DNA from: Podarcis liolepis
Lineage: Eukaryota
Reading direction: 5' to 3' (one strand)
NCBI GenBank assembly: GCA_965112155.1
Contig: OZ218110.1
Length of the DNA: 64,000 nt
Shown in pieces: positions 2,900 to 36,002 of this stretch. How positions within the stretch are numbered: the stretch's first letter is position 1; each line of letters starts with the position of its first letter. Position numbers and translations under genes: made by a program. The notes under the pieces were generated by a model. The model was not told where the DNA came from. It saw only the letters and a program-made list of their open reading frames with translations, and did no database searches.

Positions 2900-5800
2900 C
2901 TTCTGAAGAAGCTGCCATTTGGCCTTAACTGGAAACTCCTGGCATAATCTCCTATTAGTAAAATGAAAGGCCTAACCCCATTCAGTATGAGTCAGTCACA
3001 GTCCTGAGTGAGGTCCCTGGAACAAATTCACACAAGAGTGAGCTATGTTTTCAATGTCACATGTAATTTGGTCTTTAGATGCTAACCACCCTTGGTAGAA
3101 ACAGAAACCTTTCAAACACTCTGGATACTTTCTTTTTATTGTTATTTCCAGGGCTATGGTGAACATTCCTGCATTATTGTGCTCATGATATTACCTTCCA
3201 CATCTGTTTATTCCAAAGCTTCATCCACCCTTCATCCACCCTGCGCTTCAACTTAGATGAATGCATGGCATGCACAGCGTGTGCCACAGCATAGACTGCA
3301 TTGTAGATGCTATAGCTGTGGCCAGTCATGCTTGTTGGAAAAATAGAGCCAGGAAGAGTCTCCAGCTTCTCCTCCCCAGTGCATATATCACCATCCTGCG
3401 TATTTCCCTCAGAGTCAGGGAAATGACACTGAAATGCCTTTTCCCAGTATATCCTCATAAAGCCATCTTCTTTTTCCAAGATGGGATTTCTCTTCTGAAC
3501 AAATTCCTGGAATCCCAAAACGTTCTTTGAGTGAATTGTGAATGATAGAGTACCATGGAGGAAGTCTATGTCCTGATCTCTCTGATAGGGAAGTGATGTG
3601 AAATCCATCTGTACTGTCATAACCCAAACTTTCCCTTTAGCCTTTATTGGTATATCTTCATATTCTGACATAACAGGAAGCATTCTCAAAAGTGTCATGG
3701 AATCAATTTCCCCATGAATGATCAACACGTTAACAGTACTTCTCATTGCAACATTAAATGTCTTGAACCCATCTGCAACCAAGTCCGTAATACCATTAGT
3801 ATATGAAATTGATGGAAATCTTCCTATGAAATCAAAGCAGATTCCTCTCAGAATAAATTTTGGAATCACGCTCTGTAGAAACCTCTCTCCATTCTCATTA
3901 TCTGCAATCACCACACCAGTCCAGAGCCATCTGAAGTGTAGCAGTAACTTGAGAATCCCTTCATATTGATGGTCTATATTTGGGAACATTTGGTTAAGGA
4001 AAGCAACTTCAGTTTTAATATTTCTCATTGGAGCAGGACCATAGATGAGCTAAATCAAAGACAGGAAATGAGGAGATGAGAAATTTTGTTTAGGTGTACA
4101 GTGGTTTTCTATGTTAACTTGTATTGACTGCAGTGAAAATACAATCTAGATTTCAGATTTTGTTTTGAGGGAGTACTGCTGACATGGGATCTTGTCCAGG
4201 TTCTCCTCAAACATCCTGAAGCTTAAGAGAACATTAAAGAATGAGCAATCCACTAAACACAGAAAAATGTTCTCACCAGTGAAATTGTAGTAGCACAAAG
4301 TATGTGCTGGTTGAGGGTTGTGGCAATCTGCTCAAGCAATAATGCTCAGTTACCTTTCATGGCAGTGCCATGTCTTACATTACACTGGCCAAACAGGACT
4401 TCCACCATATTCCATTGTAGGATGAGAACTCCCATCATCTATGAGCACGTTGCCCTTGCTGGCTGGGGCTGGTGAAAGTTGGATTTCAATAACATCTGCA
4501 GGACACCTTACTGTAGTCCCTAAGGCAGCTTATTTCAATTAGTTATATGAAGATATCTATCCAGCTCCTCACCATTTATTTCCAAGTCAGTTAATAACAT
4601 TCTATATTCAGCAACAAGGAGAAAAAGCAAATGAAAAAGTACTGACAAAGGATCAACACAGTAACAGTTGCGACGTGGCAACTGATCATCGGTGCTTGCA
4701 AAGCACCATCATTTTGGCTGAAAAGAAGATCTAATTGTCTGGGTAGTTTTCTATCAGGAGAGGTGCTCTGAGAGAATGATACCTGTGGAATCTTGTAGTT
4801 GCTCAGTATACTTGCCATATGAAGACAAACCTCAGAGTTCGGATCTCCAATGACTGCTGCTAGTTCATTCTGGGAGTCACACTTGTAGTTTGGAATGAAT
4901 CTGCAGTATGTAGAGAGGAGTTCCAAGGAGGAACGGTAGGTCCAGCTTGCACTAAAATGGCTGTTATAGATGTGGAAGCCCAGGGTGAGGTTGGGTAAGA
5001 TTTGGAGGTTTGCATTGATCTCTTTTACAGCAAATGCTAATGCCAGGATATGTTGGTAGAGCTGTGTCATAACCCTGAAATGAGAGTAACATGCTGTAAC
5101 AGAGTGTGTTTCCTTTTGGATAGGACAATTTCTACACCTCAGCTGCACCAATACTATCTTACTGATCAATCTGAATTCAGGTAAATCAGGAGGAATATTA
5201 ACATGCACAAGTTCCAGCTCTAAACTATGGTCTTTAATCTAGTTATTTTTAAATTAAATTTCTATACAGGTGTTCATCCAAGGATTATAGGGCACTTTAA
5301 AACATAAAAACACAGAAATCCATAAGGCTCCTCAAGAAATGTAACAAAGACACAAGGTGAGCCTCCCTTAGCAGAGTATTCTACAAAGAGGGGCCACTGC
5401 AGAAAAAGGCCCTGAACCTCTTGTGAAGGGGGCACACAAAGAAATTCCTCAGATGATGATCACATGGTCTCGCTTAGTTCATATGGGGCATGGCAGTTTT
5501 TTTAGGTATTGCAGTCCTGAAACTGTTAAGGCTCACTTGAGTGATTTGTACCCCACCAATCTGAGTTACGAGGTACAAATAATAATGTCGCTTAGCTCAA
5601 GACCTGTCTCTCCCAAACTCTGCACATTGTGGCAGATTCTGGGCTTGAAATGCTCCTTAAGCTGCTGATATCATGGCTGCCGCAACTAAAAAGATAACAG
5701 ATGATGATTAATATGTGCAACTATTTGCCAAAGACAGAGAAAGCTGTCCTTCTCTCATTCACTGGATCTACCACTGATCTATGGGCCTGGCACTCCTAGG

Positions 5801-12548: not shown

Positions 12549-15500
12549 TTTATTATTGATACCCCGCCCATCTGGCTGGGCCTCCCCAGCCACTCTGGGC
12601 GGCTTCCATAAAAACCAAAAATACAGTAAAATATCACACGTTAAAAACTTCCCTGAACAGGGCTGCCTTAAGATGTCTTCTGAATGTCAGGTTGATGATG
12701 AACTTTGCTTCTTGAGGGAAATGAGCAATGGGACCATCAAAAGATTCATAAAGACCAGTAATGGATGTAATAGAAGTCATTGAGCACTTCATCACCATCA
12801 TCTTCTTTTGACGAAAGAGGATGCTGGACTAGATGGCCAATATCCTGGTCCAGCAATATCTTATTATGGTAAGTGAATGTGGTAAAATTACCTCCTCTAA
12901 TCTCTCTTTCTCAGCATACTTATAGGCATTTGATTTCAGTAAGGTTTTTTTTTTAATATGATCTTTTAATATGATCTCTTTTCATGAAGAACAATGAGAG
13001 AGAGAGAGAGAGAAATCCTTCTGAAGAAGCTGCCATTGGGCCTTAAATGGAAACTCCTGGCGTAATCTCCTATTAGTAAGATGAAAGGCCTAACCCCATT
13101 CAGTATGAGTCAGTCACAGTCCTGAGTGAGGTCCCTGGAACAGATTCACACAATAGTGAGCTATGCTTTCAATGTCACATGTAATTTGATCTTTAGTTGC
13201 TAACCACCCTTGGTAGTGTGGTTGCTGACCTTGAGCCAGACATCATGGAGAGAGAAGTCAAACGGGCCTTAGAAAGCACTGCTAATAACAAGGCCAGTGG
13301 AAGTGATGATATTCCAGCTGAACTATTTAAAATTTTAAATGATGATGTTAAGGTGCTACACTCAAGATGCCAGCAAATTTGGAAAACTCAGCAATGGCCA
13401 GAGGATTGAAGAAGATCAGTCTACATCCCAATCCCAAAGAAGGGCAGTGCCAAAGAATGCTCCAACTACCGCACAATTGCACTCATTTCACACACTAGCA
13501 AGGTTATGCTTAAAATTCTACAAGGCAGGCTTAAGCAGTATGTGGACCGAGAACTCCCAGAAGTGCAAGCTGGATTTCGAAGGGGCAGAGGAACCAGAGA
13601 CCAAATTGCAAACGTGTGCTGGATTATGGAGAAAGCTAGAGAGTTCCAGAAAGACATCTACTTCTGCTTCATTGACTACGCAAAAGCCTTTGACTGTGTC
13701 GACCACAGCAAACTATGGCGGGTTCTTAGAGAAATGGGAGTGCCTGATCACCTCATCTGTTTCCTGAGAAATCTCTATGTGGGACAAGAAGCTACAGTTA
13801 GAACTGGATGGTCTGAAGCTCAACATCATAAAAACGAAGATCATGGCCACTGGGCCCATCACCTCCTGGCAAATAGAAGGGGAAGAAATGGAGGCAGTGA
13901 GAGATTTTACTTTCTTGGGCTCCATGATCACTGCAGATGGTGACAGCAGTCACAAAATTAAAAGACACCTGCTCCTTGGGAGAAAGGCCATGGCAAACCT
14001 AGGCAGCATATTAAAAAGCAGAGACATCACCTTGCCAACAAAGGTCCGTATAGTTAAAGCCATGGTTTTCCCAGTAGTGATGTATGGAAGTGAGAGCTGG
14101 ACCATAAAGAAGGCGGATTGCCGAAGAATTGATGCTTTTGAATTATGGTGCTGGAGGAGACTCTTGAGAGTCCCATGGACTGCAAGAAGATCAAACCTAT
14201 CCATTCTTAAGGAAATCAGCACTGAGTGCTCACTAGAAGGACAGATCGTGAAGCTGCGGCTCCAATATTTGGCCAACTCATGAGAAGAGAAGACTCCCTG
14301 GAAAAGACCCTGATGTTGGGAAAGATTGAGGGCACAAGGAGAAGGGGACGACAGAGGACGAGATGGTTGGACAGTGTTCTTGAAGCTACAAACATGAGTC
14401 TAACCAAACTGCAGGAGGCAGTGGAAGACAGGAGTACCTGGCGTGCTCTGGTCCATGAGGTCATGAAGAGTCGGACACCACTAAACGACTAAACAACAAC
14501 AACCCTTGGTAGAAACAGAAACCTTTCAAACAATCTGGATACTTTCTTTTTATTGTTATTTCCAGGGCTATGGTGAACATTCCTGCATTATTGTGCTCAT
14601 ATTACCTTCCACATCTGTTGATTCCAAAGCTTCAGCTGTCCTTCATCCACCCTGCGCTTCAACTTAGATGAATGCATGGCATGCACAGCATGTGCCACAG
14701 CATAGACTGCATTGTAGATGCTATAGCTGTGGCCAGTCATGCTTGTTGGAAAAACAGAGCCAGGAAGAGTCTCCAGCTTCTCCTCCCCAGTGCAAATATC
14801 TCCATCCTGCATATTTCCCTCAGAGTCAGGGAAATGACACTGAAATGCCTTTTCCCAGTATATCCTCATAAAGCCGTCTTCTTTTTCCAAGATGGGATTT
14901 CTCATCTGAACAAATTCCTGGAATCCCAAGACCTCCTTTGAGTGAATTGTGAAGGATAGAGTACCATGGAGGAAGTCTATGTCCTGATCTCTCTGAAAGG
15001 GAAGTGATGTGAAATCCATCTGTACTGTCATGACCCAAACTTTACCTTTAGCCTTTATTGGTATATCTTCATATTCTGACACAGCAGGAAGCATTCTCAA
15101 AAGTATCATGGAATCAATTTCCCCATGAATGATCACCACATTAACAGTACTTCTCATGGCAACATTAAATGTCTTGAGCCCATCTGCAACCAAGACCGTA
15201 ATACCATTAGTATAAGACATTGTTGGAAATGTTCCTATGAAATCAAAGCAGATTCCTCTCAGAATAAATTTTGGAACCACGCTCTGTAGAAACCTCTCTC
15301 CATTCTCATCATTCACAATCACCACACCAATCCATAGCCATCCAAAGTGTAGCAGTAACTTGAGAATCCCTTCATATTCATGGTCTATATTTGGGAACAT
15401 TTGGTTAAGGAAAGCAACTTCAGTTCTAATATTTCTCATTGGAGCAGGACCATAGATGAGCTAAATCAAAGACAGGAAATGAGGAGATGAGAAATTTTGT

Positions 15501-18500
15501 TTAAGTTTGCAGTGGTTTTCTCTTTTTTTTTAACTTTTATTGACTGAGGTTAAAATACAATCTAGATTTCAGATTTTGTTTTGAGGAAGTGCTGCTGACA
15601 TGGGAGCTTGTTGGTTTTTCCTGAAACTTGAAAGAATTTAAAGGTACAGATACACTGAACAATCCTCTAAACCAGTGTTTCCCAACCTTTTTTGGGCAAA
15701 GGCACACTTGTTTCATGGAAAAAATCTCGAGGCACGCCACCATTAGAAAATGTTTAAAAAATTAACTCTGTGCCTATATTGACTATATATAAAGTAACTC
15801 TCTTTAATAGGAATCAAATAAACACAAAGATAGTATTTTATAATTACTTTATTATGAAATAGTAAGTAAACAGAAATATGAAAAATTATAAAATACTTTA
15901 TTCAGTGCGCAACCTGGGCCTGTTTGGCTGAAAGTAATGCAAAATGGATTAATCCATTCCAGACATTTAAAAACAACCCCTAAAACAGCAATTTAACATG
16001 AATCTTACTATCGATAAAGACCATTGATCCATAAAATGAAAGCAATAAACAATGTACTGCAGTCACACAATCAGTCAATCAATCAGTCACAAAAACAAAA
16101 CAAAAAAGTCAGAAAGACAAAAATGCAAAATAAACAGCAAAAGCAGACAGACCGCAAAACAGAAGCATGGCACGCAAAATGGAGCACGTTTGGCTTCTGA
16201 AAAATGTTCGCAAACCAGAACACCTGTGGCTTAGCCCACCGCCTTCCATAACCAGTCTTCAGCTTCCTTACCTATAGCGGGGGGGGGGGGATTAGTTTCG
16301 GTCACTAACGACTGGAATCGAGCTGCGTGGCTGCTTTGCTTGCAATTCCCAACCGCACTCCTTGCAAAGAGGTGGGCCGGCCATGCAATTTAAAGGAGAT
16401 GGAATCCCAGCCCGTGCCCCTGCCCCGCGCAGTCCAGTCTCGAGGCGCGCCCACCTGCCCGCCGGCAGCGAAGCAGCGAGCGGGCCTCCTGCGCCGTCCA
16501 CCTGCGGCTCAGGCGCTCCTCCAACAGCGGGTGCCGGTAACGTTTCAGGAAGCGGTGCTTCGCCACAGTTGGCCGGCCTAGGAAGAGGCCCTGGTAGACC
16601 CGGGCTTCGGCTCCCTGCTGGACCATCTCCAGCCCCGCCATGGGCGGAACAGCCGCTGCCTCGGACTCGGCGCCGCCTGCGCTCCCCTCAGCCAGCACAG
16701 CCGCCATCTTGGACGCCAACGGCCGCTCTCTCCGAGGAATGCGCCTGCGCCTTTCCTCGAGAATTCTTACGTACGGCGCGGGATCGGCGAGTTGGGCCGG
16801 CGGAAACAGCCGAGTCCGGAATCTGCACTTGCCGAAAACAGCCGAGACCCGAATCTGCACTTGCCGGAAACAGCCGAGACCCGAATCTGAACATGGCAGA
16901 CTTCGCAATCCATTTGCTTCCTAGCCTCTTGCCGCCTGACTCGCCCGCCTCCCTCCCACGGCACAGCAGGCAACGTCTCGCGGCACACTAGTGTGCCGCG
17001 GAACACCGGTTGGGAAACACTGCTCTAAACATTGAAAAGCCATGCCTTACATTACACTTGTGAAACAGGGTTTCCACAATCTTCCATTGTAGGATGAGAG
17101 CTCCCATAATCTATGAGCACATGGCCCTTGCTGGCTGGGGCTGATGAAAGTTGGATTTCAATAACATTTGCAGAACACTTTCCTGTAGTCCCTCACCCAG
17201 CTTATTTTAATTATTTGTATTAAGATATCTATCCAGCTCCTCATCATTTTTTTACATGGCAGTTAATAACATTCTATATTCAGCAACAAGGGGGGAAAGC
17301 AAATGAAGAAGAACTGACAAAGGATCAACACAGTAACAGTTCCGAAGGGCCAGCTGATCATCGGCACCTGCAAAGTGGTATGTTTTTGCCTGAAAAAGAC
17401 ACCTAATGGTCTGGATAGTTTCCTATCAGGAGAAGTACTCTGAGAGAACGTTACCTGTGGAATCTTGTAGTTGCTCAGTATATTTGCCATATGAAGACAA
17501 TCCGCAGAGTTCGGACTTCCAATAACTGCTGCTAATTCATTCTGGGTGTCACATTTGTAGTTGGGGATGAATCTGCTGTACGTAGAGAGGAGTTCCAAGG
17601 AGGAACGGTAGGTCCAGCTTGCACTGAAATGGCTGTTATAGATGTGGAAGCCCAGGGTGAGGTTGGGTAAGATTTGGAGGTTTGCATTGATCTCTTTTAC
17701 AGCAAATACTAATGCCAGGATATGTTGGTAGAGCTGTGTCATAATCCTGAAATGAGAGTTACATACTGTAACAGAGTGCGTTTCCTTCTTGGATGGAATA
17801 GGAAAATTTCTACACCTCAGCTGCACCAATACTATCTTACTGATCAATCTGAATTCAGGTAAATCTGGAGGAATATTAACATGCAGTTCCAGCTCTAAAC
17901 TATGGTCTTTAAATCTACTTATTTTTCAAATTAAATTTCTACACAAGTGTTCATCCGAGGATCATAGGGCAATTTAAAACATAAAAACACAAAAATACAT
18001 AAGGCAGCTAAAGAAATGTAACAAAGGCACCAGGTGAGCCTCCCTTAGCAGAGTATTCTACAAAGAGGGGCCACTGCAGAAAAAGGTCCTGAACCTCTTG
18101 TGAAGGCCTCAGATGATGATCACATGGTCTCGCTTAGTTCATGTGGGACATGACAGTTTTTTTAGGTATTGCAGTCCTGAAACAGTTAAGGCTCACTTGA
18201 GTGATTTGTACCCGCCCAATATGAATTATGAGGTACAAAAAAATGTGGCTTAGCCCAAGATCTGTCTGTTCCAAACTCTGCACATTCTGGCAGATTCTGG
18301 GCTTGAAATGTTCCTTAAGCTGCTGATATTAGATTCGTGGCTGCCACAACTAAAAAGATAACAGATGATGATTAATATGGGGATGATGCAACTATTTGGC
18401 AAAGACAGAGAAAGCTGTCCTTCTTCTCTCATTCACTGAATCTACCACAGATCTATGGGCCTGGCACTCCTAGGGAAAATTGATATAACAAATATATGGT

Positions 18501-21659: not shown

Positions 21660-24600
21660 TCACTGATTTCGTCTTCTTAACTGGTCCTTGTTGTTCAGCT
21701 CTGGCTTCATCACAATAATATAACATTTTGGTGAAAATATACAGCCTAGTAAACCAGTACTGGAGGACAAGATGGAGAAAATCTCCACAGCCACCATATA
21801 TTTTCCTTTTGTGCTTAAATAAGTTGGAACAAAGGACAGCCACACACTGCAAAATACCAACATACTGAAGGTGATAAACTTGGCTTCATTAAAGCTGTCT
21901 GGTAACTTCCTGGCTAGGAAGGCTACAGAGAAGCTGACAATGGCCAGCAAGCCCATAAACCCCAAGACACAGTAGAACATGGTGACTGACCCTTTGTTAC
22001 ATTCCAGAACAATTTCTTTACTCATTGAATGCATGTCTGAATCTGGGAATGGGGGAGAAGTTGCCAGCCACACGGTACAAAAAGCAGCTTGAATCAAGGA
22101 GCAGGAAAGAAGAATGGAAGTGGCCTGTTGTTTCCCCACCCATTTCCTCATGCTGGAACCTGGTTTGGTGACCATGAAAGCAAGGACCACAATGATTGTC
22201 TTGGTCAACACACAAGAAACTGCCACTGAAAAGATGATGCCAAAAGCTGTTTGTCGAAGGAGACACGTCACTTTCTTAGGTCGACCGATGAATAGAAGAG
22301 CACAAAGGAAAGCAAGCAAGAGGGAGATGAGGAGAGTGTAGGAGAGGTTGCGGTTGTTGGCTTTGACGATGGGAGTGTCCCGGTGCTTAATGAAAATCCA
22401 AAGCACCAAAGCTGTAAGGAAGGACAAGGAAACAGCAAAGAAGGCCAAAGAGATCCCCAGGGGTTCCTCATAAGACAAGAAATGGATGTCCTTTGCCACG
22501 CATGAATCCTTTTCCACATTTGGGTAATGATCCGGTGAGCAATGAAAGCATTCATCCATGTCTGAAAAAGAGAAGCTGTAGGAGACCACTACATGCATAA
22601 TACTAAAATGATCAAAATTAAAACAACAAACCTTAAATAAGGGTTGCCAGCTTCAAATCTGAAAAACAATTTGCCACACTTCTCATGTAATTATATTATT
22701 AGAAGAATGCCGTATTCAATTCCTACCCACCCCCAAATGTTAGGACCTAACACGACACCTGAAGATCAATGTTATCACTTACTGTCAGCATTCTAGCATA
22801 TTTTACTTGTTCTCGTTTTTAAACATCCCAACATGATTTGAACTTCCCATTCCAATATGTCGACTGGAGCAAGGTTGTATTTCAGTTTTATCGCATCTCT
22901 GAATTGTGAAAAATGTTTCTTGAGTCTTGTTTTTAAGAGAGAGAGGCTGTTGCACCGTTAGCTTTCCCCTGAAGTTCTTTCATATTTCTGAAGGTTTCTG
23001 TTTTTTCATCATCATCATCAATCTTTATTACAGTCCAGAGACCCAACAAATTGTTAGCTGTTTTTATCACTTTATGATACCTCCTTTGTCTGATTAATTA
23101 CCAGCTGTCTATGGCTTGGACTGATATCATTGAATATATTAGGCTGTATCCCCATATAAGGAACCACAACATTCACAAAATTCTGAACAATTACCGTATT
23201 TTTCGCCCCATAAGACGCACTTTTCCCCCTCCAAAAATGAAGGGGAAATGTACCTGCGTCTTATGGGGCGAATGCAGGCTTTCGGTGAAGCCTGGAGAGC
23301 GAGGGGGGTCGGTGCGTACCGACCCCTCTCGCTCTCCAGGCTTCAGGAAGCTCTGCGCAACCCTCGGAAGACCGGCTCCGAGGGTTGCGCAGAGCTGCCT
23401 GCAATCCCGGGACCAGCACAGCTCTGCCCGGCCACCGGGAGCCGGGGCGAAGGTCCGCCCCGCTCCCGGTGGCCCTGCAGAGCTGCCTGCGGTCCTGGGA
23501 CCAGCGCAGCTCTGCCCGGCCACCGGGAGCCGGGGGAGAAGCTCCGCCCCGCTCCCGGTGGCCCTGCAGAGCTGCCTGCGGTCCTGGGACCAGCGCAGCT
23601 CTGCCCGGCCACCGGGAGCGGGGGGAGAAGCTCCGCCCCGCTCCCGGTGGCCCTGCAGAGCTGCCTGCGCTCCTGGGACCAGCGCAGCTCTGCCCGGCCA
23701 CCGGGAGCCGGGGGAGAAGCTCCGCCCCGCTCCCGGTGGCCCTGCAGAGCTGCCTGCGGTCCTGGGACCAGCGCAGCTCTGCGCCCCCATCCCGAGCGGG
23801 GCGCTAAGTCCCGCCCCGCTCGGGATGGCGGCAGAGGGCTGCCTGCGTCGCGGGACCGCAGGCAGGTCTCTGCCGCCATCCCGAGCGGGGCGCTAAGTCC
23901 CGCCCCACTCGGGATGGCGGCAGAGAGCTGCCTGCGTCGCGGGACCGCAGGCAGGTCTCTGCCGCCATCCCGAGCGGGGCGCTAAGTCCCGCCCCACTCG
24001 GGATGGCGGCAGAGAGCTGCCTGCGTCGCGGGACCGCAGGCAGGTCTCTGCCGCCATCCCGAGCGGGGCGCTAAGTCCCGCCCCACTCGGGATGGCGGCA
24101 GAGAGCTGCCTGCCGTCGCGGGACCGCAGGCAGGTCTCTGCCGCCATCCCCAGCGGGGCGCTAAGTCCCGCCCCACTCGGGATGGCGGCAGAGAGCTGCC
24201 TGCCGTCGCGGGACCGCAGGCAGGTCTCTGCCGCCATCCCCAGCGGGGCGCTAAGTCCCGCCCCACTCGGGATGGCGGCAGAGAGCTGCCTGCCGTCGCG
24301 GGACCGCAGGCAGGTCTCTGCCGCCATCCCGAGCGGGGCGCTAAGTCCCGCCCCACTCGGGATGGCGGCAGAGAGCTGCCTGCGTCGCGGGACCGCAGGC
24401 AGGTCTCTGCCGCCATCCCGAGCGGGGCGCTAAGTCCCGCCCCACTCGGGATGGCGGCAGAGAGCTGCCTGCGTCGCGGGACCGCAGGCAGGTCTCTGCC
24501 GCCATCCCGAGCGGGGCGCTAAGTCCCGCCCCACTCGGGATGGCGGCAGAGAGCTGCCTGCCGTCGCGGGACCGCAGGCAGGTCTCTGCCGCCATCCCGA

Positions 24601-27600
24601 GCGGGGCGCTAAGTCCCGCCCCACTCGGGATGGCGGCAGAGAGCTGCCTGCGTCGCGGGACCGCAGGCAGGTCTCTGCCGCCATCCCGAGCGGGGCGCTA
24701 AGTCCCGCCCCGCTCGGGATGGCGGCAGAGAGCTGCCTGCCGTCGCGGGACCGCTGGCAGGTCTACGCCGCCATCCCGAGCGGGGCGCTAAGTACCGCCC
24801 CGCTCAGGATGGTGGCAGAGAGCTGCCTGCCGTCGCGGGACCGCTGGCAGGTCTACGCCGCCATCCCGAGCGGGGTGCTAAGTACCGCCCCGCTCAGGAT
24901 GGTGGCAGAGAGCTGCCTGCCGTCGCGGGACCGCAGGCAGGTCTCAGCCGCCATCCCGAGCGGGGCGCTAAGACCCGCCCTGCTCAGGATGGCGGCACAG
25001 AGCTGCCTGCCCTCCCGGGACTGGTGCACTTCTCCCCATCGCCAGCCCCACAAGCTCGGGGGACAGCGGGGAGGCAGAGCGTGCCTTCCCACTGTTCCCC
25101 GACCTGGTTCTTCCAGCCCCGCACCTGGGGGGGAAATAAATTTTTTTTTCTTTATTTCCCCCCCAAAAAACTAGGTGCGTCTTATGGGCCGGAGCGTCTT
25201 ATGGGGCGCAAAATACGGTATACTGAATTTTCTGAACAACTGAACACCACAAGGGTGTTTGTCTGAATATCTTATTGTCAGTACATTTTAAAGGCTCTAT
25301 ACATGATGTCTCTTACCTGTCTGGTTGGAAATCTTCCATTCTGGACATAAGACGCAATCATAGCAGCAAAATGGTTTCCCTTCCTTCTTTGTTTTTTGAT
25401 AACCCAAAGGACAATTGGCATTACAAAGAGAAAGAGGCTGGGCCTGTCCACAAATGAAAGAGGATCATGGTTTCTTTTTTTGCAATATTGTGTGTCCACA
25501 ATGTATACTTGATGAACGATCTCCTTGAACTGCTGCATTACCAGCACCAAACCTGGGCAGTGTATATGGAGGTCCTGGGTTACCCAGACAAAAAGACATC
25601 CTTCTTGACCTCACTGATGTGGTCCAAAGGAAAGCAGAGCAATATGTCGCAGATTTGGGTAGGGAAAGGAAACGAGCAAGCCCCGTTGTGATAAAAGGAA
25701 TCCTTAGGCTGCCTTCCCCTACATGAATATGGCCCTCTGTAAATTTATCAATTTTTAATTTTTTACAGGTGGTAAATTTGGTGATTGTAGTGCAATAATG
25801 GATTTAATGAATGTCACTTAATTGGCAAAACATGGAAGATCTCTACAGCCATGCCCTCACTCCTACACCAAGCACATGGATGAACAAAGCACAGAGCTAG
25901 GTCAGTATTGAACTGTGAATCATTGTAGAAGTGAAGGATAGGCTACAAAATATGAATTTATCTCACCTGGTTAAACCTGCTGGGCCACACAATGGCTTCT
26001 TCACAAATTCTGAACACTTCTTCTTGGGGAGCCATGGGGTCGATCTTTCCAACTTTCACTCTCCGAAAGGACTGGTTTGGAAATGTGACCCAGTTTATAA
26101 TATCAAATCCAGACTCTAACTCTCCATTTTGGTTGAAGGAAACTTTCCCCCCACCACTATTATTAAATGAGATGCTTTTAACAAAGTGGTTGAGCTGTTT
26201 GGGGAGAAAGAATAGGTAGAATTAGAGAGGAATTAAAAGAAAGCAAATTCATAAGAATATACAAAAGGCTGGTGATCACTCGCAATTGATTACTGAACTG
26301 TTTAAAAGCTTTATACCAAGGAAGAATGGATACAGAGAGAGGAAGAGCCCGATAGGCCACCTTGAGCTTATTGCAGGAACGTTGAGAGATACGTATAACA
26401 ATAAACAGATCCAGTAATAAACTACAATAGTAAAATGTAACAGTGGTACTAATGAAGGAAGTGACTGGGCAGGAGTGGAGCAGGTCAGAATGGTATAGCA
26501 ACTTTTACATTTATAACCGTGATGTGGTGGAAGGTAGAAGCAGGAAAAAATCCTGCTCCATGCTTATTATTATGAGCTTTTGGACTTTCCAGAGAATCTA
26601 GATTCTCTGCTTATTCCTTTGCATCTGGTGAGCAGTGGAGATTAGACATGGAAGAAATTGGATAGCTATGACTATATACTTGCTCCAGAAAAAGGGGCAT
26701 CGTCTCTCTGAACACCAGACTGTTGGGAGTGGCCTATTGCCATAATGTCATGATTGAACACTTCCCACAGGTATCAAGTTGGCTGCCTTGGGAAACCTTT
26801 CAACTGATCCATCACCTTTTCTACTCTGCTTTTAGCATGCTTGGGACATTACCGTCCACAACTGCTCATTCTGAAATGTTATTCCTTCATCCACTGTCAT
26901 TCTGCCTTTGAGTCTAGATGGGTGCATGGCATGCAAAGCATGTGCAACCACATAGACTTCTATGTAGACATTGTAGTTGTAGGGTGCGGGACCTACAGGT
27001 ATTGGCTATGTTTGCTGGGAATATGGGTGTTGCAGTTCAGAAACATCTGGAGGGAGGGCTGAAGGTTCCCCATCCCTGCCTTAGGACTAGAGACATGTGT
27101 CTGGAGTCAAAGCTGGTTCAACCTGCTGGGCCATACAATGGCATCCTCATGAATGGTGCACTTTCCCCAGGGGTCTTGTGGACCATTTTGGTTAAAATAA
27201 ACTCTCCCCCCCAGACTATTATTATAGAAGCTATTTAAGGAAGCTTTTAATGTTTGATGGATAACTGTATTTTAATATTTTGGTGGAAGCTGCCCAGAGT
27301 GGCTGTGGAAGCCCAGCCAGATGGGCGGGGTATAAAAAATAAATTATATTATTATTATTATTATTTCTCACCAAACAACTAAGCAAATTGGACAGGGGGA
27401 AAGTGCTGGAAGATTCCATTACACCTTTAGTTGCAGGCATGAGATTATTACGTGTCACATGTCTGTTTACATTTCAGCACAGTTTGCTGGCGTAAGTAGA
27501 ACTTCTGCTGTACTTCTTTTGTTTTGACTCTCTCTCCGAGAAGACGGCAAGGAAAGATGACATGTTTCTTTGTTCTGATTTATGAAAAATAAATCTGTAG

Positions 27601-30600
27601 TTGTAGTATGTACCCAAAGCCTCTTCTGTTTGTGCGGTTTACACTGCTACGTATTGTGCGCTCGTCAGCTAGCTTGAGTCGCTAATTTATATCAGAGCCA
27701 GAGCTTGATGGGTCTTCGCAGTGTGAAGGCTGAGAGGGAAATGAACCAGCTGGGGGCTAGCCAGCTGGCCTTTCAGCCCCTGGATGCCGACAGAAACATG
27801 GGGAAAGAAGGGTATTTCATAAGAAAATATAACAGGTTGATGATGAACTTTCGTTCTTGGGGATATGAGCAATGGACCCTTCAAAAGATTCATAAAGACC
27901 AGTAATGGATGCAATAGAAGTCATTGAGCATTACATCACCATCATCTTCCTTTGACAAAAAAGGATGCTGGACTAGATGGGCCAATGTCCTGGTCCAGCA
28001 GCATCTTCTTATGGCCTTAAGTAAGTAAATGCAGAACAATTACCTCTTGTGTACTCTCTTTCTCTACGTACATATGGGCATTTAATTTCAGTAAGGTTTT
28101 TTTTTAATAAGATCTTTTCATGAAGAATAATGAGAGAGAGAGAGGGAGGGAGGGAGGGAGGGGGAGGGAGGGAGGGAGGGAGGGAGAGGGAGGGAGGGAG
28201 GGAGGGAGAAAAATCTTTCTGAAGAAGCTGCCATTTGGCCTTAAATGGAAACTTCTGGTGTAATCTCCTATTAGTAAGAATAAAGGGCTAGCCCCATTCA
28301 GTGTGAGCCAGTCACAGCCCTGAGTGTGGTCCCTAGAACAGATTCACACAACAGTGAGCTATGCTTTCAATATCACATGTAATTTGGTCTTTAGATGCTA
28401 ACCACCCTTGGTAGAAACAGAAACTTTTCAAACACTCTGGATTCTTCCTTTTTATTATTATTCCCAGGGCTATGGTGAGCATTCCTGCATTATTGTAATC
28501 ATGATATTACCTTCCACATCTGTTGATTCCAAAGCTTCAGCCGTCCTTCATCCACTCTGCGCTTGAATTTAGATGAATGCATGGCATGCACAGCATGTGC
28601 CACAGCATAGACTGCATTGTAGATGCTATAGCTGTGGCCAGTCATGCTTGTTGGAAAAATAGAGCCAGGAAGAGTCTCCAGCTTCTCCTCCCCAGTGCAA
28701 ATATCTCCATCCTGCATATTTCCCTCAGAGTCAGGGAAATGACACTGAAATGCCTTTTCCCAGTATATCCTCATAAAGCCATCTTCTTTTTCCAAGATGG
28801 GATTTCTCATCTGAACAAATTCCTGGAATCCCAAGACCTCCTCTGAGTGAATTGTGAAGGATAGAGTACCATGGAGGAAGTCTATGTCCTGATCTCTCTG
28901 ATAGGGAAGTGATGTGAAATCCATCTGAACTGTCATGACCCAAACTTTGCCTTTAGCCTTTATTGGTATATCTTCATATTCTGACATAGCAGGAAACATT
29001 CTTAAAAGTGTCATGGAATCAATTTCTCCATGAATGATCAACACATTAACAGTACTTCTCATGGCAACATTAAATGTCTTGAGCCCATCTGCAACTACGT
29101 CCGTAATACCATTAGCATAAGTCATTGTTGGAAATCTTCCTATGAAATCAAAGCAGATTCCTCTCAGAATAAATTTTGGAACCACACTCTGTAGAAACCT
29201 CTCTCCATTCTCATTATCTGCAATCAATACACCAGTCCATAGCCATCTGAAGTGTAGCAGTAACATGAGAATCCCTTCATATTGATGGTCTATACTTGGA
29301 AACATTTGGTTAAGGAAAGCAACTTCATTTTTATTATTTCTCATTGGAGCAGGACCATAGATGAGCTAAATCAAAGATAGGAAATGAGGAGATGAGAAAT
29401 TTTGTTTAAGTGCACAGTGGTTTTCTATGTTAACTTGTATTGGCTGCAGTGAAAATACAATCTAGATTTCAGATTTTGTTTTGAGGGAGTGCTGCTGACA
29501 TGGGATCTTGTCCAGGTTTTCCTCAAACTTAAGAGACCATTAAAGAATGAGCAATCCACAAAACATAGAAAAATGTTCTCACCAATGAAATTGTAGTAGC
29601 ACAAAGTATATGCTGGTCGAGGGTTGTGGCAATCTACTCAAGGAATAATTGTCAGTTACCTTTCATGGTAGTGCCATGTCTTACATTACAATGGTGAAAC
29701 AGGACTTCCACCATCTTCCATTGTAGGATGAGAACTCCCATCATCTATGAGCACATTGCCCTTGCTGGCTGGAGCTGATGAAAGTTGGATTTCAATAACA
29801 TCTGCAGGACACCTTACTGTAGTCCCTCAGGCAGCTTATTTCAATTAGTTGTATTAAAATATCTATCCAGCTCCTCACCATTTATTTCCAAGTCAGTTAA
29901 TAACATTCTGTATTAAGCAACAAGGAGAAAAAGCAAATGAAAAAGAACTGACAAAGGATCAACAGAGTAACAGTTGTGAAGTGGCAACTGATCGTCGGCA
30001 CCTGCAAAGTGCTAGGTTTCTGCCTGAAAAGAAGACCCAATGGTCTGGGTAGTTTCTAACAGGAGAGGTGCTCTGAGAGAATGATACCTGTGGAATCCTG
30101 TAGTTGCTCAGTATACTTGCCATATGAAGACAAACCTCAGAGTTCGGACCTCCAATGACTGCTGCTAGTTCATTCTGGGAGTCACACTTGTAGTTGGGGA
30201 TGAATCTGCTGTACGTAGAGAGGAGTTCCAAGGAGGAACGATAGGTCCAGCTGGCACTGAAATGGCTGTTATAGATGTGGAAGCCCAGGGTGAGGTTGGG
30301 TAAGATTTGGAGGTTTGCATTGATCTCCTTTACAGCAAATACTAATGCCAGGATATGTTGGTAGAGCTGTGTCATAACCCTGAAATGAGAGTTACATGCT
30401 ATAACACAGTGTGTTTCCTTCTCGGTAGGAAAATTTCTACACTTCAGCTGCCCCAATACTATCTTACTGATCAATCTGAATTCAGGTAAATCTGGAGGAA
30501 TATTAACATGCACATGTTCCAGCTCTAAACTATGGTGTTTAAATCTAGTTATTTTTAAATTAAATTTCTATACAACGTTGTTCATCCAAGGATCATAGTG

Positions 30601-31685: not shown

Positions 31686-33349
31686 TATTTTTCAGTAATT
31701 CCTTTGCTGTGTTGGGCAGCTTAACTTAAGTCCACACTACACTGATTTGTGAGTCAGATTGTGCAGTGTAGAGCATCTGTTATCAGCCTGACCAATCTCT
31801 GACTATCTCTTGTTACACCTTGGAATTGTACCGGCAATATTCACAGCACCCTCCTATCTTCATTGATAATAATGCAACTCATATTTGCAGCTTCCTTGAT
31901 ATGTGGAAACAAAGCTTCTATGCTTAATTTCATAATTACAGAGAGGATAATAATATCATTGAGATTTACAGGCATTTAGATGTAATGGCTGCAATCATCC
32001 AGCTCATGTGATCATCTAATGGTGTTATGGGAATTATTAGTCCAAGATAGTGCAATTTGTAGCAGGAAACTAGGTGGATGTAACTATAGTAGTTAGGAGC
32101 AGATGGTATTTATACTCTCATCTTTGTACAAGCAGGGACCTTTGAGCAAATACCATGCTAGATGCATTACACTTGAAAGTGAAGTTGTGGTTCGAGGACC
32201 CGACCCCGGTGAAGTGAAATGAAGACACAAGGACACGTGATATATGGTTAATGGGCTAGAGAAAGGCCACAACTTTATTGGTTACAGCATTTGAAAAGGT
32301 ATTGGCTTAGGCATTGGATCGAAACAAGTGGGTTCTTCACCAGTAGGTGGAGCCTGTCGATGCTGATCCGACTATAGGCTCACCCCTGCTGTCACCGAGG
32401 GTCGTGCCAAGGCCTCCCGCCAAGCAGGCATCGGACGGAATACACGACCCCCAGATTCCTTTAACGGAATACCCCTAAAAATTGAAGGCATAGGCGATGG
32501 CCACACCTAGCACTTCCACACAGCGCAACACATTATTCCAATGCCTAACCTACCCACCAATACCACAAAAAAGTTGTGACGATTGCTACGAGGTAGGCGA
32601 AAAAACCAATTAGCCTAGTGCCAAATGGAAAAACTCCTACCAGGCCCCCCAGCCAACCAGGGCGACCAACCTAAGGTCCATAGCAAGGCCGAAAAAACCT
32701 GAGCCCTAACTAAAGGGAGTGGAGGGTGGATGACTCGTGAGGGGCGAAGGAAGGAAGAATGAGGCCGGGCGAAGGCTGGCGCTGCAGCAAAATGCTGCTG
32801 AACACGCCCCCACCGTGGCCCCCGGTTGGATGGCCACCGAGGGGCGTGAGCGCCAGCCAGGTGAGTGGGCAGCAGGGGGCCACGCCCCCTGCTAGCCGGA
32901 GCTCGAGCCCCGACCACAACCCCTCCCCTCCCCTTCGGGGAGGAGAGTCTTTGTGGTTCGAGGACCCGACCCCGGTGAAGTGAAATGAAGACACAAGGAC
33001 ACGTGATATATGGTTAATGGGCTAGAGAAAGGCCACAACTTTATTGGTTACAGCATTTGAAAAGGTATTGGCTTAGGCATTGGATCGAAACAAGTGGGTT
33101 CTTCACCAGTAGGTGGAGCCTGTCGATGCTGATCCGACTATAGGCTCACCCCTGCTGTCACCGAGGGTCGTGCCAAGGCCTCCCACCAAGCAGGCATCGG
33201 ACGGAATACACGACCCCCAGATTCCTTTAACGGAATACCCCTAAAAATTGAAGGCATAGGCGATGGCCACACCTAGCACTTCCACACAGCGCAACACATT
33301 ATTCCAATGCCTAACCGCCACCCGAGCTAAAGGCTCGCCGCCAATACCC

Positions 33350-34006
33350 TCAAAGCTGCAACCAATCCCAGATGTTTCTAATGACACTAGCTAACCAAAA
33401 ATCATTCCCCAGATCCGATAGATGGACACCGTCATCCCGGTATAAGGCCTTGTCGCTAATCCGGATACGGTCATGGTAAATCACTCGGCCATCCGTAAAG
33501 CGCACCCAACGGGCTACCGCCCGATTTACGAGTTTCCTGGTTCTTTCAATGGCCATCAAGTTTTGCGCACCGCGCCACACAGTTCTTTTCAGGAAGGAGG
33601 ACCAGAATACTGTCGTTCTGGGACACAAGGCAGCGAATGCATTCAAGTCTCTTTTTATGCTTGACAACAAGTCCACACTCCTTTTGTTGACAAGGTCATT
33701 CTCCCCTAAATGAATCACCAGGACATCGGGAGAGCCGAGCTTGGCTACTTTCTCCCGCAGCAAAGGCATCAGTTCTTCCCAACGCATGCCTCTTCTCGAA
33801 AACCAGGAAACTCGAACATCACGTGGCAGACCAAGGTTGGGTGCCAGGCCGCAGCTCACCGCTCGCACGCGGGCCCAATGGACAATGCTGTGACCGCAAA
33901 TCCACACGTTTCTTCCGGGAATAGCTAGGAATAAAGATAGAACAAAAGGAAGGGTAAGCAGACTAAGGGGTAGGCGCAAGGTTGCGAATATACGACTTAT
34001 AAACAT
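33350..34006 (-). CDS. SGNH/GDSL-type hydrolase ORF of the Ngaro-type element
   Basis: Blocks VWICGHS, RRG, HLGENDL, DGVH. A hydrolase ORF after YR is known in vertebrate Ngaro elements. Confidence 0.85.
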   Translation of the reverse strand: MFISRIFATLRLPLSLLTLPFVLSLFLAIPGRNVWICGHSIVHWARVRAVSCGLAPNLGLPRDVRVSWFSRRGMRWEELMPLLREKVAKLGSPDVLVIHLGENDLVNKRSVDLLSSIKRDLNAFAALCPRTTVFWSSFLKRTVWRGAQNLMAIERTRKLVNRAVARWVRFTDGRVIYHDRIRISDKALYRDDGVHLSDLGNDFWLASVIRNIWDWLQL

Positions 34007-34628
34007 TGGATTTCCACCGGCCCAACTCTTTTATCCTTTCTGCCGGCAACCCTAGGTGCGCGGCCGTGGTGGCGGCCCCGATCCTGAACGAATGTGCAGC
34101 GTACTCATGGGGGGGTAGGCCACAGGCTTCAATAGCCTTGCGCATTACTCTAGTGAATTGGTACCTCAACAGGGGAGACCCATCCTCGTGTATCAGGAAC
34201 GGTCCCGGGACGGCTGGTCTAAGGCGGAGAAACCGCCTCGTGTCCTTCACCGGACATGGGCCCTGCTGGGCCGACGCCGTGAGCTTGAGCAGGACACCCT
34301 TGCCAGTCTGATCGGTCTTGGACTGACGCACCAGTACTGACAAAGCAGATTCGGATAGCTGTACATCCTCAACCAGGAGGCCGCGAGTTAAACCCCGCGC
34401 ACTAGCTTCACAGACAACCTCACCAACTCTGAGCGCACCAAAAAAGGCTATAGCGTAAGCCGCAGAGAAGAGCCGTGCCTCAAACTTAGACCAACAAATT
34501 GTCCTGAGCTTTACACGTATCTGAGATAGCAATCCATAAGAAATAGGCTTACGACCAACGGTCCTGGGCGGTTGCAACCTGCCCCAACCTTCAATGGCTC
34601 TACGAATCAGGAAGAGGGAGAATACCAT
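33963..34628 (-). CDS. Tyrosine recombinase catalytic domain of the Ngaro-type element
   Basis: FFGALRVGE, SKTDQ, HSFRIGAAT, LGRWKS...SYIR give the R-K-H-R-W-Y catalytic set. Confidence 0.9.
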   Translation of the reverse strand: MVFSLFLIRRAIEGWGRLQPPRTVGRKPISYGLLSQIRVKLRTICWSKFEARLFSAAYAIAFFGALRVGEVVCEASARGLTRGLLVEDVQLSESALSVLVRQSKTDQTGKGVLLKLTASAQQGPCPVKDTRRFLRLRPAVPGPFLIHEDGSPLLRYQFTRVMRKAIEACGLPPHEYAAHSFRIGAATTAAHLGLPAERIKELGRWKSNVYKSYIRNLAPTP

Positions 34629-36002
34629 TAAGTTAGGAGCGCCCGTCAGCTGTTGGGCGGCTGAACGCGGCCGGCGGCAGCGAAAAGGCAGCGCTCGGAA
34701 GGGCTGTAGCCCAGACTCGAAGGCAGAAGCAAGCGTCAGCTGTTGAGCGGCAAAGTGGAGAGTTTAAATTGTAGGCTGCAAAGGCGGCAGCAGCCGGATG
34801 GTTCTAATTGCTGCAGCCGGATGGTTCTAATTGCTGCTGCTGGGTCGCTGGGAAGGCACAGGGAAACCAAGCCAAACTAATTTAGAAAAGCCACACGGCG
34901 GGGAACGCAGCGGTTCAGCACCCACCACCCACGCGAAAGAAAAGAAGCAACGCAAATACTTCCCTGGCTTCCGATGCGACGGGCTCCAGAGCAGCTGACT
35001 CGTGAGGGGCGAAGGAAGGAAGAATGAGGCCGGGCGAAGGCTGGCGCTGCAGCAAAATGCTGCTGAACACGCCCCCACCGTGGCCCCCGGTTGGATGGCC
35101 ACCGAGGGGGCGTGAGCGCCAGCCAGGTGAGTGGGCAGCAGGGGGCCACGCCCCCTGCTAGCCGGAGCTCGAGCCCCGACCACAACCCCTCCCCTCCCCT
35201 TCGGGGAGGAGAGTCTTTACTTAGCTTGCTCTGTGCAGGTCTCACTGGTATTCACAAACTGACAGATTAATATGATGGTGATGGCAGAAATCCCCTTGAA
35301 AAAATGATGTTTGTGGAGGGAGTTAAATGTTGTTGAAAAACCACCATAAGTTTGTATTCTCTGCAGTCCTGACTTCTGTTCATTTGTTTTTGTTGTGTTT
35401 TTTATAAATTTATTTATTTTCAAATTTACAAATCTACAAACAATCCTCAAGCAACAACAACAACAACAAAAAAGGATTCCATAATTCCCCATGGACTTAT
35501 CTCCTCCCTGTTCTGGGTCCTTTATTAACTTTTTTCTCCTGCATGTTTAAAACCATTTATCCAGGGGTTCTCAACTCTGAGTTAGACCTCAATCTCCTTG
35601 TATTTGTATTGTTACTTTGCACTGTACCTTTAAACTCAACCTCGTTGTTATCAGAATCACCCAGATTTGGCTTTACATGTTTCTCAAAAAATATTGTTAG
35701 TAGCAGTTAGTACATTATTACAAGAGCACTGTTCCACAGCATTTGATATTTTCATTTATATACATTCATTCAAAATAAGATGGGGTATGTACTCTTCTCC
35801 ATTACTGTTTGTATTATAGTTTATAATTTTTGTAAAGTGATATGTCATGCAGGTGATCATCTGTAAAAATTTATTTTCGGTTTATGAAGCTTTCTATATC
35901 CACCCACCACGCTGACGAAGAATTCTCCGAAACAGTAGTCAATATTCGGAATTACTGTTCAGTGTTGGACATCATTCTTGAATACATAAAGCTTCACAGC
36001 TT

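What the first reader, a model, noticed from the sequence alone, without database searches (positions are those of the whole stretch)
15673..17022. hAT transposon that captured the first exon and promoter-like region of the KEOPS kinase TP53RK (Pack-TIR-type gene capture)
Seen: a 1350-bp element with 15-bp TIRs and an exact 8-bp TSD (CTCTAAAC), absent from the same intron in paralogs A and C, so it arrived as one unit. Inside is an ATG-initiated 84-codon exon matching the TP53RK/Bud32 N-lobe (QGAEA loop, VAK lysine, QEAR helix C). It ends at a G|GTGGGC splice donor followed by non-coding GC-rich sequence, with CpG-rich sequence upstream. Known: TP53RK is a conserved housekeeping gene (KEOPS, t6A tRNA modification), and Pack-MULE-type capture is common in plants and much less reported in vertebrates. 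Inference: the retained donor, intron and upstream DNA point to DNA-level capture rather than a retrocopy. This may be a mobile promoter-exon-donor cassette spread through the genome.
Basis: partly seen in the sequence, partly recalled or inferred. Interest (0 to 1): 0.93.

Follow-up and report, generated by a model that had tools for sequence, protein, structure and literature searches.

The report
Lizard hAT transposon carrying TP53RK start
A small cut-and-paste (hAT) transposon with no transposase gene, sitting in an intron of a lizard vomeronasal receptor gene, carries a DNA copy of the promoter region, first exon and intron start of the housekeeping kinase gene TP53RK; the cargo-bearing element exists in roughly 6-20 decaying copies in wall lizards, a kind of element already described but rare in vertebrates.

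Summary
Window 15673-17022 is a 1350-bp element with perfect 15-bp inverted ends and an exact 8-bp target duplication. It lies in an intron of V2R paralog B and is missing from paralogs A and C. Contigs from two other lizard samples join 15664 directly to 17023, which is the exact empty site.

On the minus strand it carries TP53RK exon 1 (84 codons; PDB TP53RK, E 3e-22). The GT donor, the adjoining downstream DNA read as intron start, and about 216 bp of the genuine gene's 5' flank are also present. This is DNA-level capture, not a retrocopy.

The cargo is multicopy:
- Podarcis muralis has at least 8 distinct exon-1 fragment protein models. All share Ser15, which no genuine lacertid TP53RK has.
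- Contig depth over the cargo is about 6-20 times single copy. The hAT ends are orders of magnitude deeper in summed contig depth.

The copies look dead. Their private changes are almost all CpG transitions, mostly non-synonymous. Splicing into the host V2R exon would be out of frame.

Verdict: a genuine multicopy Pack-hAT, a new member of a known but rare vertebrate kind (Tan et al. 2021). The scan has already found the same kind with other cargoes (PRKAR2A, TAL1) elsewhere in this genome.

The parts
15665..15672 (.). Left copy of the 8-bp target-site duplication CTCTAAAC
   Evidence: Read directly. The joint 15664->17023 has 8 ambiguous letters.
15673..15687 (+). Left terminal inverted repeat CAGTGTTTCCCAACC
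   Evidence: a perfect 15-bp inverted pair, the only perfect matches in the window.
15673..16059 (.). Left hAT arm. It is very high copy and is itself a mosaic of two repeat modules joined near 15931.
   Evidence: summed contig depth 1e5-1.3e6 against about 30 for single-copy contigs. Loose ends at 15930/15932. Other family members diverge rightward at 16059.
16060..16250 (.). A-rich filler of intermediate copy number and unknown origin. It is either more of TP53RK intron 1 containing a repeat, or a second filler. The right edge is approximate.
   Evidence: depth falls from about 1e5 to about 3e3-7.5e3 (16109-16112) and reaches cargo level (about 250 in X4) by 16270.
16231..16271 (-). Mini-exon [14 protein letters not shown]-stop used as second exon by five 97-aa P. 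muralis gene models. Its acceptor AG is at 16273-16272, behind a C12 tract (16279-16290).
   Evidence: the last 13 residues of three of these 97-aa models (P0126, P0130, P0132) map to 16272-16234 at 100% (P0125 and P0127, which carry the same tail, gave no separate hit). Sequence.
16291..16454 (-). Start of TP53RK intron 1 carried along with the exon. Donor GT is at 16454-16453.
   Evidence: multicopy contigs run across the donor without a break (X4 16307-16477 at depth 300; 16448-16774 at depth 260). Zootoca read-through model P0128 aligns to 16393. No exon 2 follows.
16455..16707 (-). TP53RK exon 1 coding part: ATG at 16707, 84 codons plus 1 base (phase 1). This copy carries R39Q, P54L and R70W.
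16708..16923 (-). TP53RK 5'UTR and promoter-proximal CpG-island DNA, including three 32-bp tandem repeats (16801-16896)
   Evidence: the 5'-extended genuine P. muralis model P0129 matches up to 16922; repeats. CpG o/e 1.27.
16924..17022 (.). Right hAT arm (99 bp, very high copy), ending in the right TIR at 17008-17022
   Evidence: depth up to 1.8e6. About 26 contigs per run diverge leftward exactly at 16924 into a different, shared GC-rich sequence.
17023..17030 (.). Right copy of the target-site duplication CTCTAAAC
14597..15460 (-). Downstream host exon of V2R paralog B (ANF_receptor domain). It starts in phase 0 at 15460.
17263..17847 (-). Open frame holding the upstream host exon of V2R paralog B. 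The exon's exact ends were not set.

Best explanation
This is one recently inserted copy of a multicopy 'Pack-hAT'.

Origin (inferred). A transposase-less hAT element had part of its interior replaced by a DNA copy of the TP53RK 5' end: about 216 bp of promoter/5'UTR, exon 1, the splice donor and at least 165 bp of intron 1. This most likely happened by template switching during repair or replication of a hAT copy. The capture happened once, in the wall-lizard (Podarcis) lineage.

Spread (shown). The chimeric element kept both hAT ends. A hAT transposase supplied in trans moved it to roughly 6-20 sites. One of these is the intron of V2R paralog B, marked by an 8-bp TSD and an exact empty site elsewhere.

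Fate (shown). The copies carry no function under selection. They accumulate CpG-to-TpG changes, a sign of germline methylation, and these break the reading frame's conservation.

What is shown and what is inferred. Shown: the anatomy, the TP53RK identity, the DNA-level nature of the copy, the multicopy state and the precise insertion. Inferred: the capture mechanism, the trans-acting transposase, and the silencing.
For: TIR and TSD.

Absent from paralogs A and C.

Exact empty site (skips 1358, 8 shared letters) on B-type flanks in two other runs.

TP53RK identity: PDB 7sza E 2.8e-22; lacertid TP53RK at 87-92% identity.

DNA-level capture:
- The genuine 5'-extended model P0129 matches to 16922.
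- Genuine proteins match residues 1-85 only.
- The donor and downstream DNA are retained.

The right breakpoint at 16923/16924 is seen independently as the point where about 26 contigs per run leave the window sequence.

Multicopy state:
- 8 distinct P. muralis fragment models.
- All have Ser15, against Pro15 in every genuine lacertid gene, and each has 0-2 private changes, a star-like pattern.
- Cargo contigs have depth 401-633 against about 27-34 (X1), and 260-300 against about 23-48 (X4).

Decay:
- The five private differences of this copy within 16403-16785 all turn a CpG into TpG or CpA, and three change an amino acid.
- Private changes in the other copies are mostly R->W/Q/C and A->V.

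No transposase domain.

The kind is described: Pack-TIRs, mostly hAT; the multicopy ones are rare and favour GC-rich DNA (PMC8277862).
Against: The genuine TP53RK locus DNA could not be fetched (look-up of encoding contigs closed). The parent comparison therefore rests on protein models, one of them a 5'-extended Ensembl/UniProt model.

The left capture breakpoint is not fixed. It lies somewhere between 16060 and about 16270.

Copy number comes from summed contig k-mer depth. The tool itself warns that this is not a copy count.

No run could be shown to be the window's own individual, so the filled junctions were not confirmed by independent reads.

No copy other than this one was seen with its own TIRs and TSD.
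Confidence: 0.85

Rival explanations
1. The cargo is an exapted, working unit. Either the captured CpG-island promoter fires from within the V2R intron and its donor splices to downstream exons, giving a chimeric V2R transcript. Or it gives the internal two-exon 97-aa N-lobe peptide, which would bind the KEOPS partner TPRKB, and selection keeps that peptide.
For: The cassette is in sense orientation to the host. The promoter region, ATG, donor and an internal acceptor with a C12 tract are all intact. Five P. muralis models use the same internal splice, and two others splice exon 1 to foreign exons. Strand-specific RNA reads cover exon 1 and stop at the donor. Tan et al. report that many Pack-TIRs are transcribed as chimeras.
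Against: Exon 1 ends in phase 1 and the V2R exon starts in phase 0, so the fusion would stop after 11 codons. The private changes of this and the other copies are mostly non-synonymous CpG transitions, which means no purifying selection and germline methylation. The RNA reads carry the consensus letters, not this copy's, and cannot be told apart from genuine TP53RK mRNA. No read joint from the donor to any exon in the stretch was listed.
Confidence: 0.07
2. This is a single-copy Pack-TIR made on the spot. A pre-existing hAT in this intron would have been filled with TP53RK DNA by transposition-independent gap repair, which is the main route for animal Pack-TIRs in Tan et al. 2021.
For: That route accounts for most animal Pack-TIRs.
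Against: The empty site lacks the whole element, not just the cargo. The cargo is multicopy with a shared derived residue. No cargo-less hAT was seen at this site in paralogs or other samples.
Confidence: 0.03
3. Artefact or misreading: the true TP53RK 5' end misassembled into the V2R array, or a processed retrocopy of TP53RK.
For: No read set of the source individual was available to span the junctions.
Against: Perfect TIRs, an exact TSD and a matching empty site are not what a misjoin produces. Full-length TP53RK in four lacertids has Pro15, not Ser15. A retrocopy would carry exon 2 after exon 1 and would lack the promoter and the intron, but here the match stops at residue 85 and the 5' flank is present.
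Confidence: 0.02

Closest known systems
Multicopy Pack-TIRs of animals, e.g. Pack-hAT-N8_XT carrying the CAPSL 5'UTR in Xenopus tropicalis (Tan et al. 2021, Nat Commun, PMC8277862)
   Same: A non-autonomous hAT with both TIRs and an 8-bp TSD. Its interior is a host gene's GC-rich 5' fragment. It was amplified to several loci with different insertion sites. The parent gene is elsewhere in the genome.
   Different: The host is a lacertid lizard; the only lizard in that survey, Anolis, had 0 Pack-TIRs. The cargo is larger (at least 630 bp against a median of 224 bp) and is a complete promoter-exon-donor unit of a housekeeping kinase. The apparent copy number (about 6-20) is higher than the 3-5 of the frog case.
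Pack-MULEs of rice and other plants
   Same: A TIR element carrying host gene fragments, with a bias towards GC-rich 5' ends of genes, amplification after capture, and chimeric transcripts (as cited in PMC8277862; otherwise my own knowledge).
   Different: The superfamily differs: hAT with an 8-bp TSD and 15-bp TIRs, not Mutator with a 9-11-bp TSD and long TIRs. This is an animal genome. Only a handful of cargoes is known here, against thousands in rice.
Other Pack-hAT candidates noted by this scan in the same genome (PRKAR2A 5' end, TAL1 fragment; s1-843421, s1-845164, s1-843425)
   Same: The same genome, the same kind of element (transposase-less hAT with CpG-island cargo), and reported multicopy.
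   Different: The cargo differs. I could not compare their backbones with this one, so whether they belong to the same hAT family is untested.

Membership tests
hAT superfamily (non-autonomous member) | 8-bp target-site duplication, usually nTnnnnAn | tested here: met
   CTCTAAAC on both sides. The empty site has one copy and the joint has 8 ambiguous letters. T is at position 2 and A at position 7.
hAT superfamily (non-autonomous member) | Short terminal inverted repeats beginning YARNG | tested here: met
   Perfect 15-bp TIR beginning CAGTG.
hAT superfamily (non-autonomous member) | A related autonomous element encoding a hAT transposase (BED/RNase-H-like/hATC) with the same ends | not testable with these tools
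   No transposase lies in the element or near it. The lizard genome cannot be searched here. A findings search gave no autonomous partner.
Pack-TIR (Tan et al. 2021 definition) | TE sequence with TIRs on both sides of an internal non-TE segment | tested here: met
   High-copy arms at 15673-16059 and 16924-17022 flank a low-copy interior.
Pack-TIR (Tan et al. 2021 definition) | The internal segment is a duplicate of a host sequence whose parental copy exists elsewhere | tested here: met
   Full-length TP53RK exists in P. muralis, P. raffonei, P. lilfordi, Zootoca and Lacerta, with a distinct exon-1 signature. 5'-flank homology was shown through P0129. The test was at protein level only, because the parental DNA was not fetched.
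Pack-TIR (Tan et al. 2021 definition) | Multicopy class: the same cargo at several loci with different TSDs | tested here: inconclusive
   Several copies are shown (8 distinct P. muralis models; depth 6-20 times single copy). Their own TIRs and TSDs could not be inspected.
TP53RK/Bud32 kinase (functional gene) | Complete kinase fold: N-lobe plus C-lobe with the catalytic HGD and DFG motifs | tested here: not met
   Only residues 1-85 (part of the N-lobe) are present. No further exon lies in the window. There is no Pfam kinase hit. It is a gene fragment.

The most novel reading that the evidence does not exclude
Wall lizards may harbour a very abundant, recently active hAT-N family that serially captures CpG-island 5' ends of host genes and amplifies each one. 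Cargoes so far would be TP53RK here and, from unverified scan notes, PRKAR2A, TAL1 and others. That would make it a vertebrate counterpart of the rice Pack-MULE system. It would scatter dozens of promoter-exon-donor cassettes through the genome, some forming chimeric transcripts, as several P. muralis gene models hint.
Probability: 0.35. Interest if true: 0.7.

Novelty: new member of a known kind. Interest (0 to 1): 0.5.

Why it matters
Gene-fragment capture by DNA transposons is a major source of exon shuffling in plants. In a survey of 100 animal genomes it was rare: 370 cases, only four of them multicopy, and none in the one lizard examined.

This is a clean, young, multicopy example in a lizard. 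It carries a complete promoter, first exon and splice donor, and it has an exact empty site. It suggests that hAT elements moved in trans until recently in lacertids.

It also gives a natural experiment on what happens to a housekeeping CpG island once it is moved. Here it appears to become methylated and to decay.

In practice it explains the many spurious 'non-specific serine/threonine protein kinase' fragment models in Podarcis annotations.

Tried and rejected
- The look-up of encoding contigs for the genuine P. muralis TP53RK (P0121) was closed. The cargo was therefore not aligned to the parental DNA, and no breakpoint microhomology was read.
- A second protein search with the 97-aa model added no further lacertid copies. 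It returned only ordinary exon-1 read-through ORFs from many vertebrates.
- BLASTN of the element against the window found no second copy or relative. The TIR search with mismatches gave only chance-level hits.
- Pfam on all element ORFs found no transposase and nothing else. Rfam found nothing.
- Literature searches for TP53RK plus transposon, and for Podarcis plus hAT, found no prior description.
- The MAFFT alignment of the empty site against paralogs A and C is poor, because B has diverged and lost about 100 bp there. I relied on the contig joint instead.
- RNA evidence (X23 and X15) cannot separate element-derived transcripts from genuine TP53RK mRNA, because rows at the diagnostic codon were not shown. 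No claim of expression is made.
Frame compatibility was judged by translating referenced stretches only.
- A composite-transposon origin (two hATs flanking the gene) was considered and set aside, because the inner junctions at 16059/16060 and 16923/16924 do not look like TIRs.

Full report
**1. The observation**

The stretch 15673-17022 begins with CAGTGTTTCCCAACC and ends with its exact reverse complement. These are the only perfect matches to that 15-mer in the 64-kb window. It is flanked on both sides by CTCTAAAC, at 15665-15672 and 17023-17030. An 8-bp duplication with T at position 2 and A at position 7, and ends of the YARNG type, are the hallmarks of hAT elements (my own knowledge of the superfamily).

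The window is a tandem array of five vomeronasal type-2 receptor-like genes on the minus strand (ANF_receptor domain; repeat families). The element lies in the intron between the exon in 17263-17847 and the exon that starts at 15460. The same intron of paralogs A and C lacks the element and holds the target sequence once. Paralog B has also diverged and lost about 100 bp next to the site, so that alignment is only approximate.

**2. The empty site**

Laying contigs of public lizard runs on 14400-18000 gave a joint from 15664 to 17023. It appears in two runs of two differently labelled organisms. It skips 1358 bases (1350 + 8), and 8 letters fit on either side.

The contigs lie on the B-specific left flank (15492-15664). 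Its last 60 bp have no counterpart in A or C. So they are a B-type orthologue or allele without the insertion. This is the signature of a cut-and-paste insertion, and it argues against misassembly. No run could be shown to be the window's own individual, so the filled junctions themselves were not re-read.

**3. What the interior is**

On the minus strand an ATG at 16707 opens 84 codons that end at 16455, followed by G|GTGGGC. The peptide matches human TP53RK structures at E 2.8e-22, aligning the QGAEA loop, the VAK lysine and the QEAR helix. It matches lacertid TP53RK at 87-92% identity.

Full-length lacertid TP53RK proteins match only residues 1-85, and no later exon is in the window.

A 5'-extended model of the genuine Podarcis muralis gene (P0129) matches the element upstream of the ATG as far as 16922. 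The match includes the three 32-bp tandem repeats at 16801-16896.

Independently, about 26 contigs per run leave the window sequence exactly at 16924. They continue leftward into a different, shared GC-rich sequence, which is the ordinary body of the hAT family. The right capture breakpoint is therefore 16923/16924.

Downstream of the donor, the multicopy contigs continue unbroken to at least 16307, and to 16270 by depth. A Zootoca read-through model aligns to 16393. So the DNA next to the exon, most simply the start of intron 1, came along as well.

A promoter flank, an intact donor and intron DNA exclude a retrocopy. The interior keeps a CpG island: GC 64% and CpG o/e 0.96, against 0.09-0.23 in the flanks. 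No ORF of the element has a transposase or any other Pfam domain, and there is no Rfam match.

**4. Architecture by copy number**

Single-copy contigs have depth of about 27-34 in run X1 and about 23-48 in X4.

| Region | Depth |
|---|---|
| Arms 15673-16059 and 16924-17022 | 1e5 to 1.8e6 (summed) |
| 16060 to about 16250 | intermediate |
| Cargo, about 16270-16923, X1 | contigs of 401-633 |
| Cargo, about 16270-16923, X4 | contigs of 260-300 |

- The arms belong to an enormously abundant hAT/MITE family. The left arm is itself a mosaic with a junction near 15931.
- The intermediate region may be a repeat inside the TP53RK intron or a second filler. This is unresolved.
- The cargo depth is roughly 6-20 times single copy. 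The tool warns that summed depth is not a copy number, so this is only an order of magnitude.

**5. Independent evidence that the cargo is multicopy**

The protein collection holds eight distinct short P. muralis 'non-specific serine/threonine protein kinase' models that consist of this exon 1 plus something else.

- All eight, and the window copy, have Ser15. The genuine TP53RK of P. muralis, P. raffonei, Zootoca vivipara and Lacerta agilis has Pro15, and that of P. lilfordi has neither residue there (a two-residue gap followed by Asp).
- Each copy differs from the copy consensus by 0-3 private residues, a star-like pattern.
- This fits one capture followed by a burst from a master copy.
- Five models splice exon 1 to a mini-exon ([12 protein letters not shown]-stop). 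In the window it lies at 16231-16271, behind a C12 tract and an AG.
- Two other models splice exon 1 to unrelated exons.
- A Zootoca 'TP53RK-like' fragment carries Zootoca-type residues. It is not part of this family.
- Six coded organisms hold about half of the sampled words of the stretch. This fits a genus-wide presence of the arms and cargo.

**6. State of the copies**

Within 16403-16785, this copy differs from the multicopy consensus at 16415, 16500, 16547, 16592 and 16678. Each difference turns a CpG into TpG or CpA. Three of them change an amino acid: R39Q, P54L and R70W.

The private changes of the P. muralis copies are R->W, R->C, R->Q and A->V, again CpG-type, together with G->E. 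That is the pattern of a methylated, unselected sequence. Most CpGs survive (62 left) and non-CpG differences are about 1 in 560. The insertion is therefore young, at most a few million years as a rough inference.

Exon 1 ends in phase 1 and the host exon at 15460 starts in phase 0. Splicing between them would stop after 11 codons.

Stranded RNA reads of one run cover exon 1 in sense and stop at the donor. They carry the consensus letters and cannot be told from genuine TP53RK mRNA. I make no claim of expression.

**7. Mechanism**

Shown:
- a hAT-type insertion;
- a DNA-level TP53RK 5' fragment between hAT arms;
- several copies sharing a derived residue.

Inferred:
- The fragment replaced part of a hAT interior by template switching during gap repair or replication. 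[quoted passage not shown] 2021.
- The chimera was then mobilised in trans by an autonomous hAT, which was not found here.
- The copies are silenced by methylation.

**8. Comparison with what is known**

Tan et al. 2021 (PMC8277862) defined Pack-TIRs in animals.

- They found 370 in 100 genomes, 208 of them hAT.
- Only four were multicopy: three in Xenopus tropicalis and one in alligator.
- The multicopy ones favour GC-rich DNA.
- The single lizard in their table, Anolis, had none.

Searches for TP53RK plus transposon, and for Podarcis plus hAT, found no description of this element. It is therefore a new member of a known, rare kind.

Earlier notes of this scan report the same kind with other cargoes elsewhere in this genome: PRKAR2A and TAL1 (s1-843421, s1-845164, s1-843425). 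One note (s1-843424) cautions that a CpG-rich interior can simply be the family's normal body. I tested that caution here. The family's normal body diverges from this element at 16924 and 16059. The interior is low copy and homologous to a real gene, so this case is a true capture.

**9. Limits**

- The read tools were limited to one call each.

Noticed in passing
P0124 against P0121/P0122 and the element copies (alignment A3): The genuine TP53RK of Podarcis raffonei shares Val4 and Gly11 with the transposon-borne copies. P. muralis, P. lilfordi, Zootoca and Lacerta have Ala4 and Ala11. Possible causes are gene conversion of the real gene by a Pack copy, ancestral polymorphism or introgression, or parallel mutation (A4V is a CpG transition).
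   Followed up: partly
window 14400-14520: Contig depth here is the highest in the laid stretch (about 1.3e7 summed in X1), and RNA reads are abundant on both strands. Loose ends at 14403 and 14503 bound a roughly 100-bp, extremely abundant repeat (SINE-like?) just downstream of the V2R exon.
   Followed up: no
window 15930-16059: Inside the left hAT arm, a 130-bp module has its own junctions (loose ends at 15930/15932, 16018 and 16059) and higher depth than its neighbours. The 'backbone' is thus itself a mosaic of at least two abundant repeats.
   Followed up: no
window 15613-15672 and 17031-17045 against paralogs A (4195-4370) and C (29510-29675): Paralog B lacks about 100 bp that A and C have directly beside the insertion site, and its 60 bp left of the site are strongly diverged. 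The empty-site contigs share this B-type structure, so the deletion predates the insertion.
   Followed up: partly
P0128 (Zootoca vivipara XP_034957817.1, 106 aa): Zootoca has a separate 'TP53RK-like' exon-1-plus-intron model with Zootoca-type residues. It could be an independent duplicate, an uncollapsed haplotype or an intron-retaining isoform. It is not the Podarcis Pack family.
   Followed up: no
window 16733: Organism B's multicopy contigs have a GAG insertion behind 16733 that the window and organism A lack. This is a lineage marker within the cargo family and suggests the window is nearer to organism A.
   Followed up: no
window 23194-25218 and 32187-35218: Other notes on this window describe a Tc2-type element filled with 89-bp arrays, seen here as 89/90-bp tandem families, and a Ngaro-type element. 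I did not examine them.
   Followed up: no
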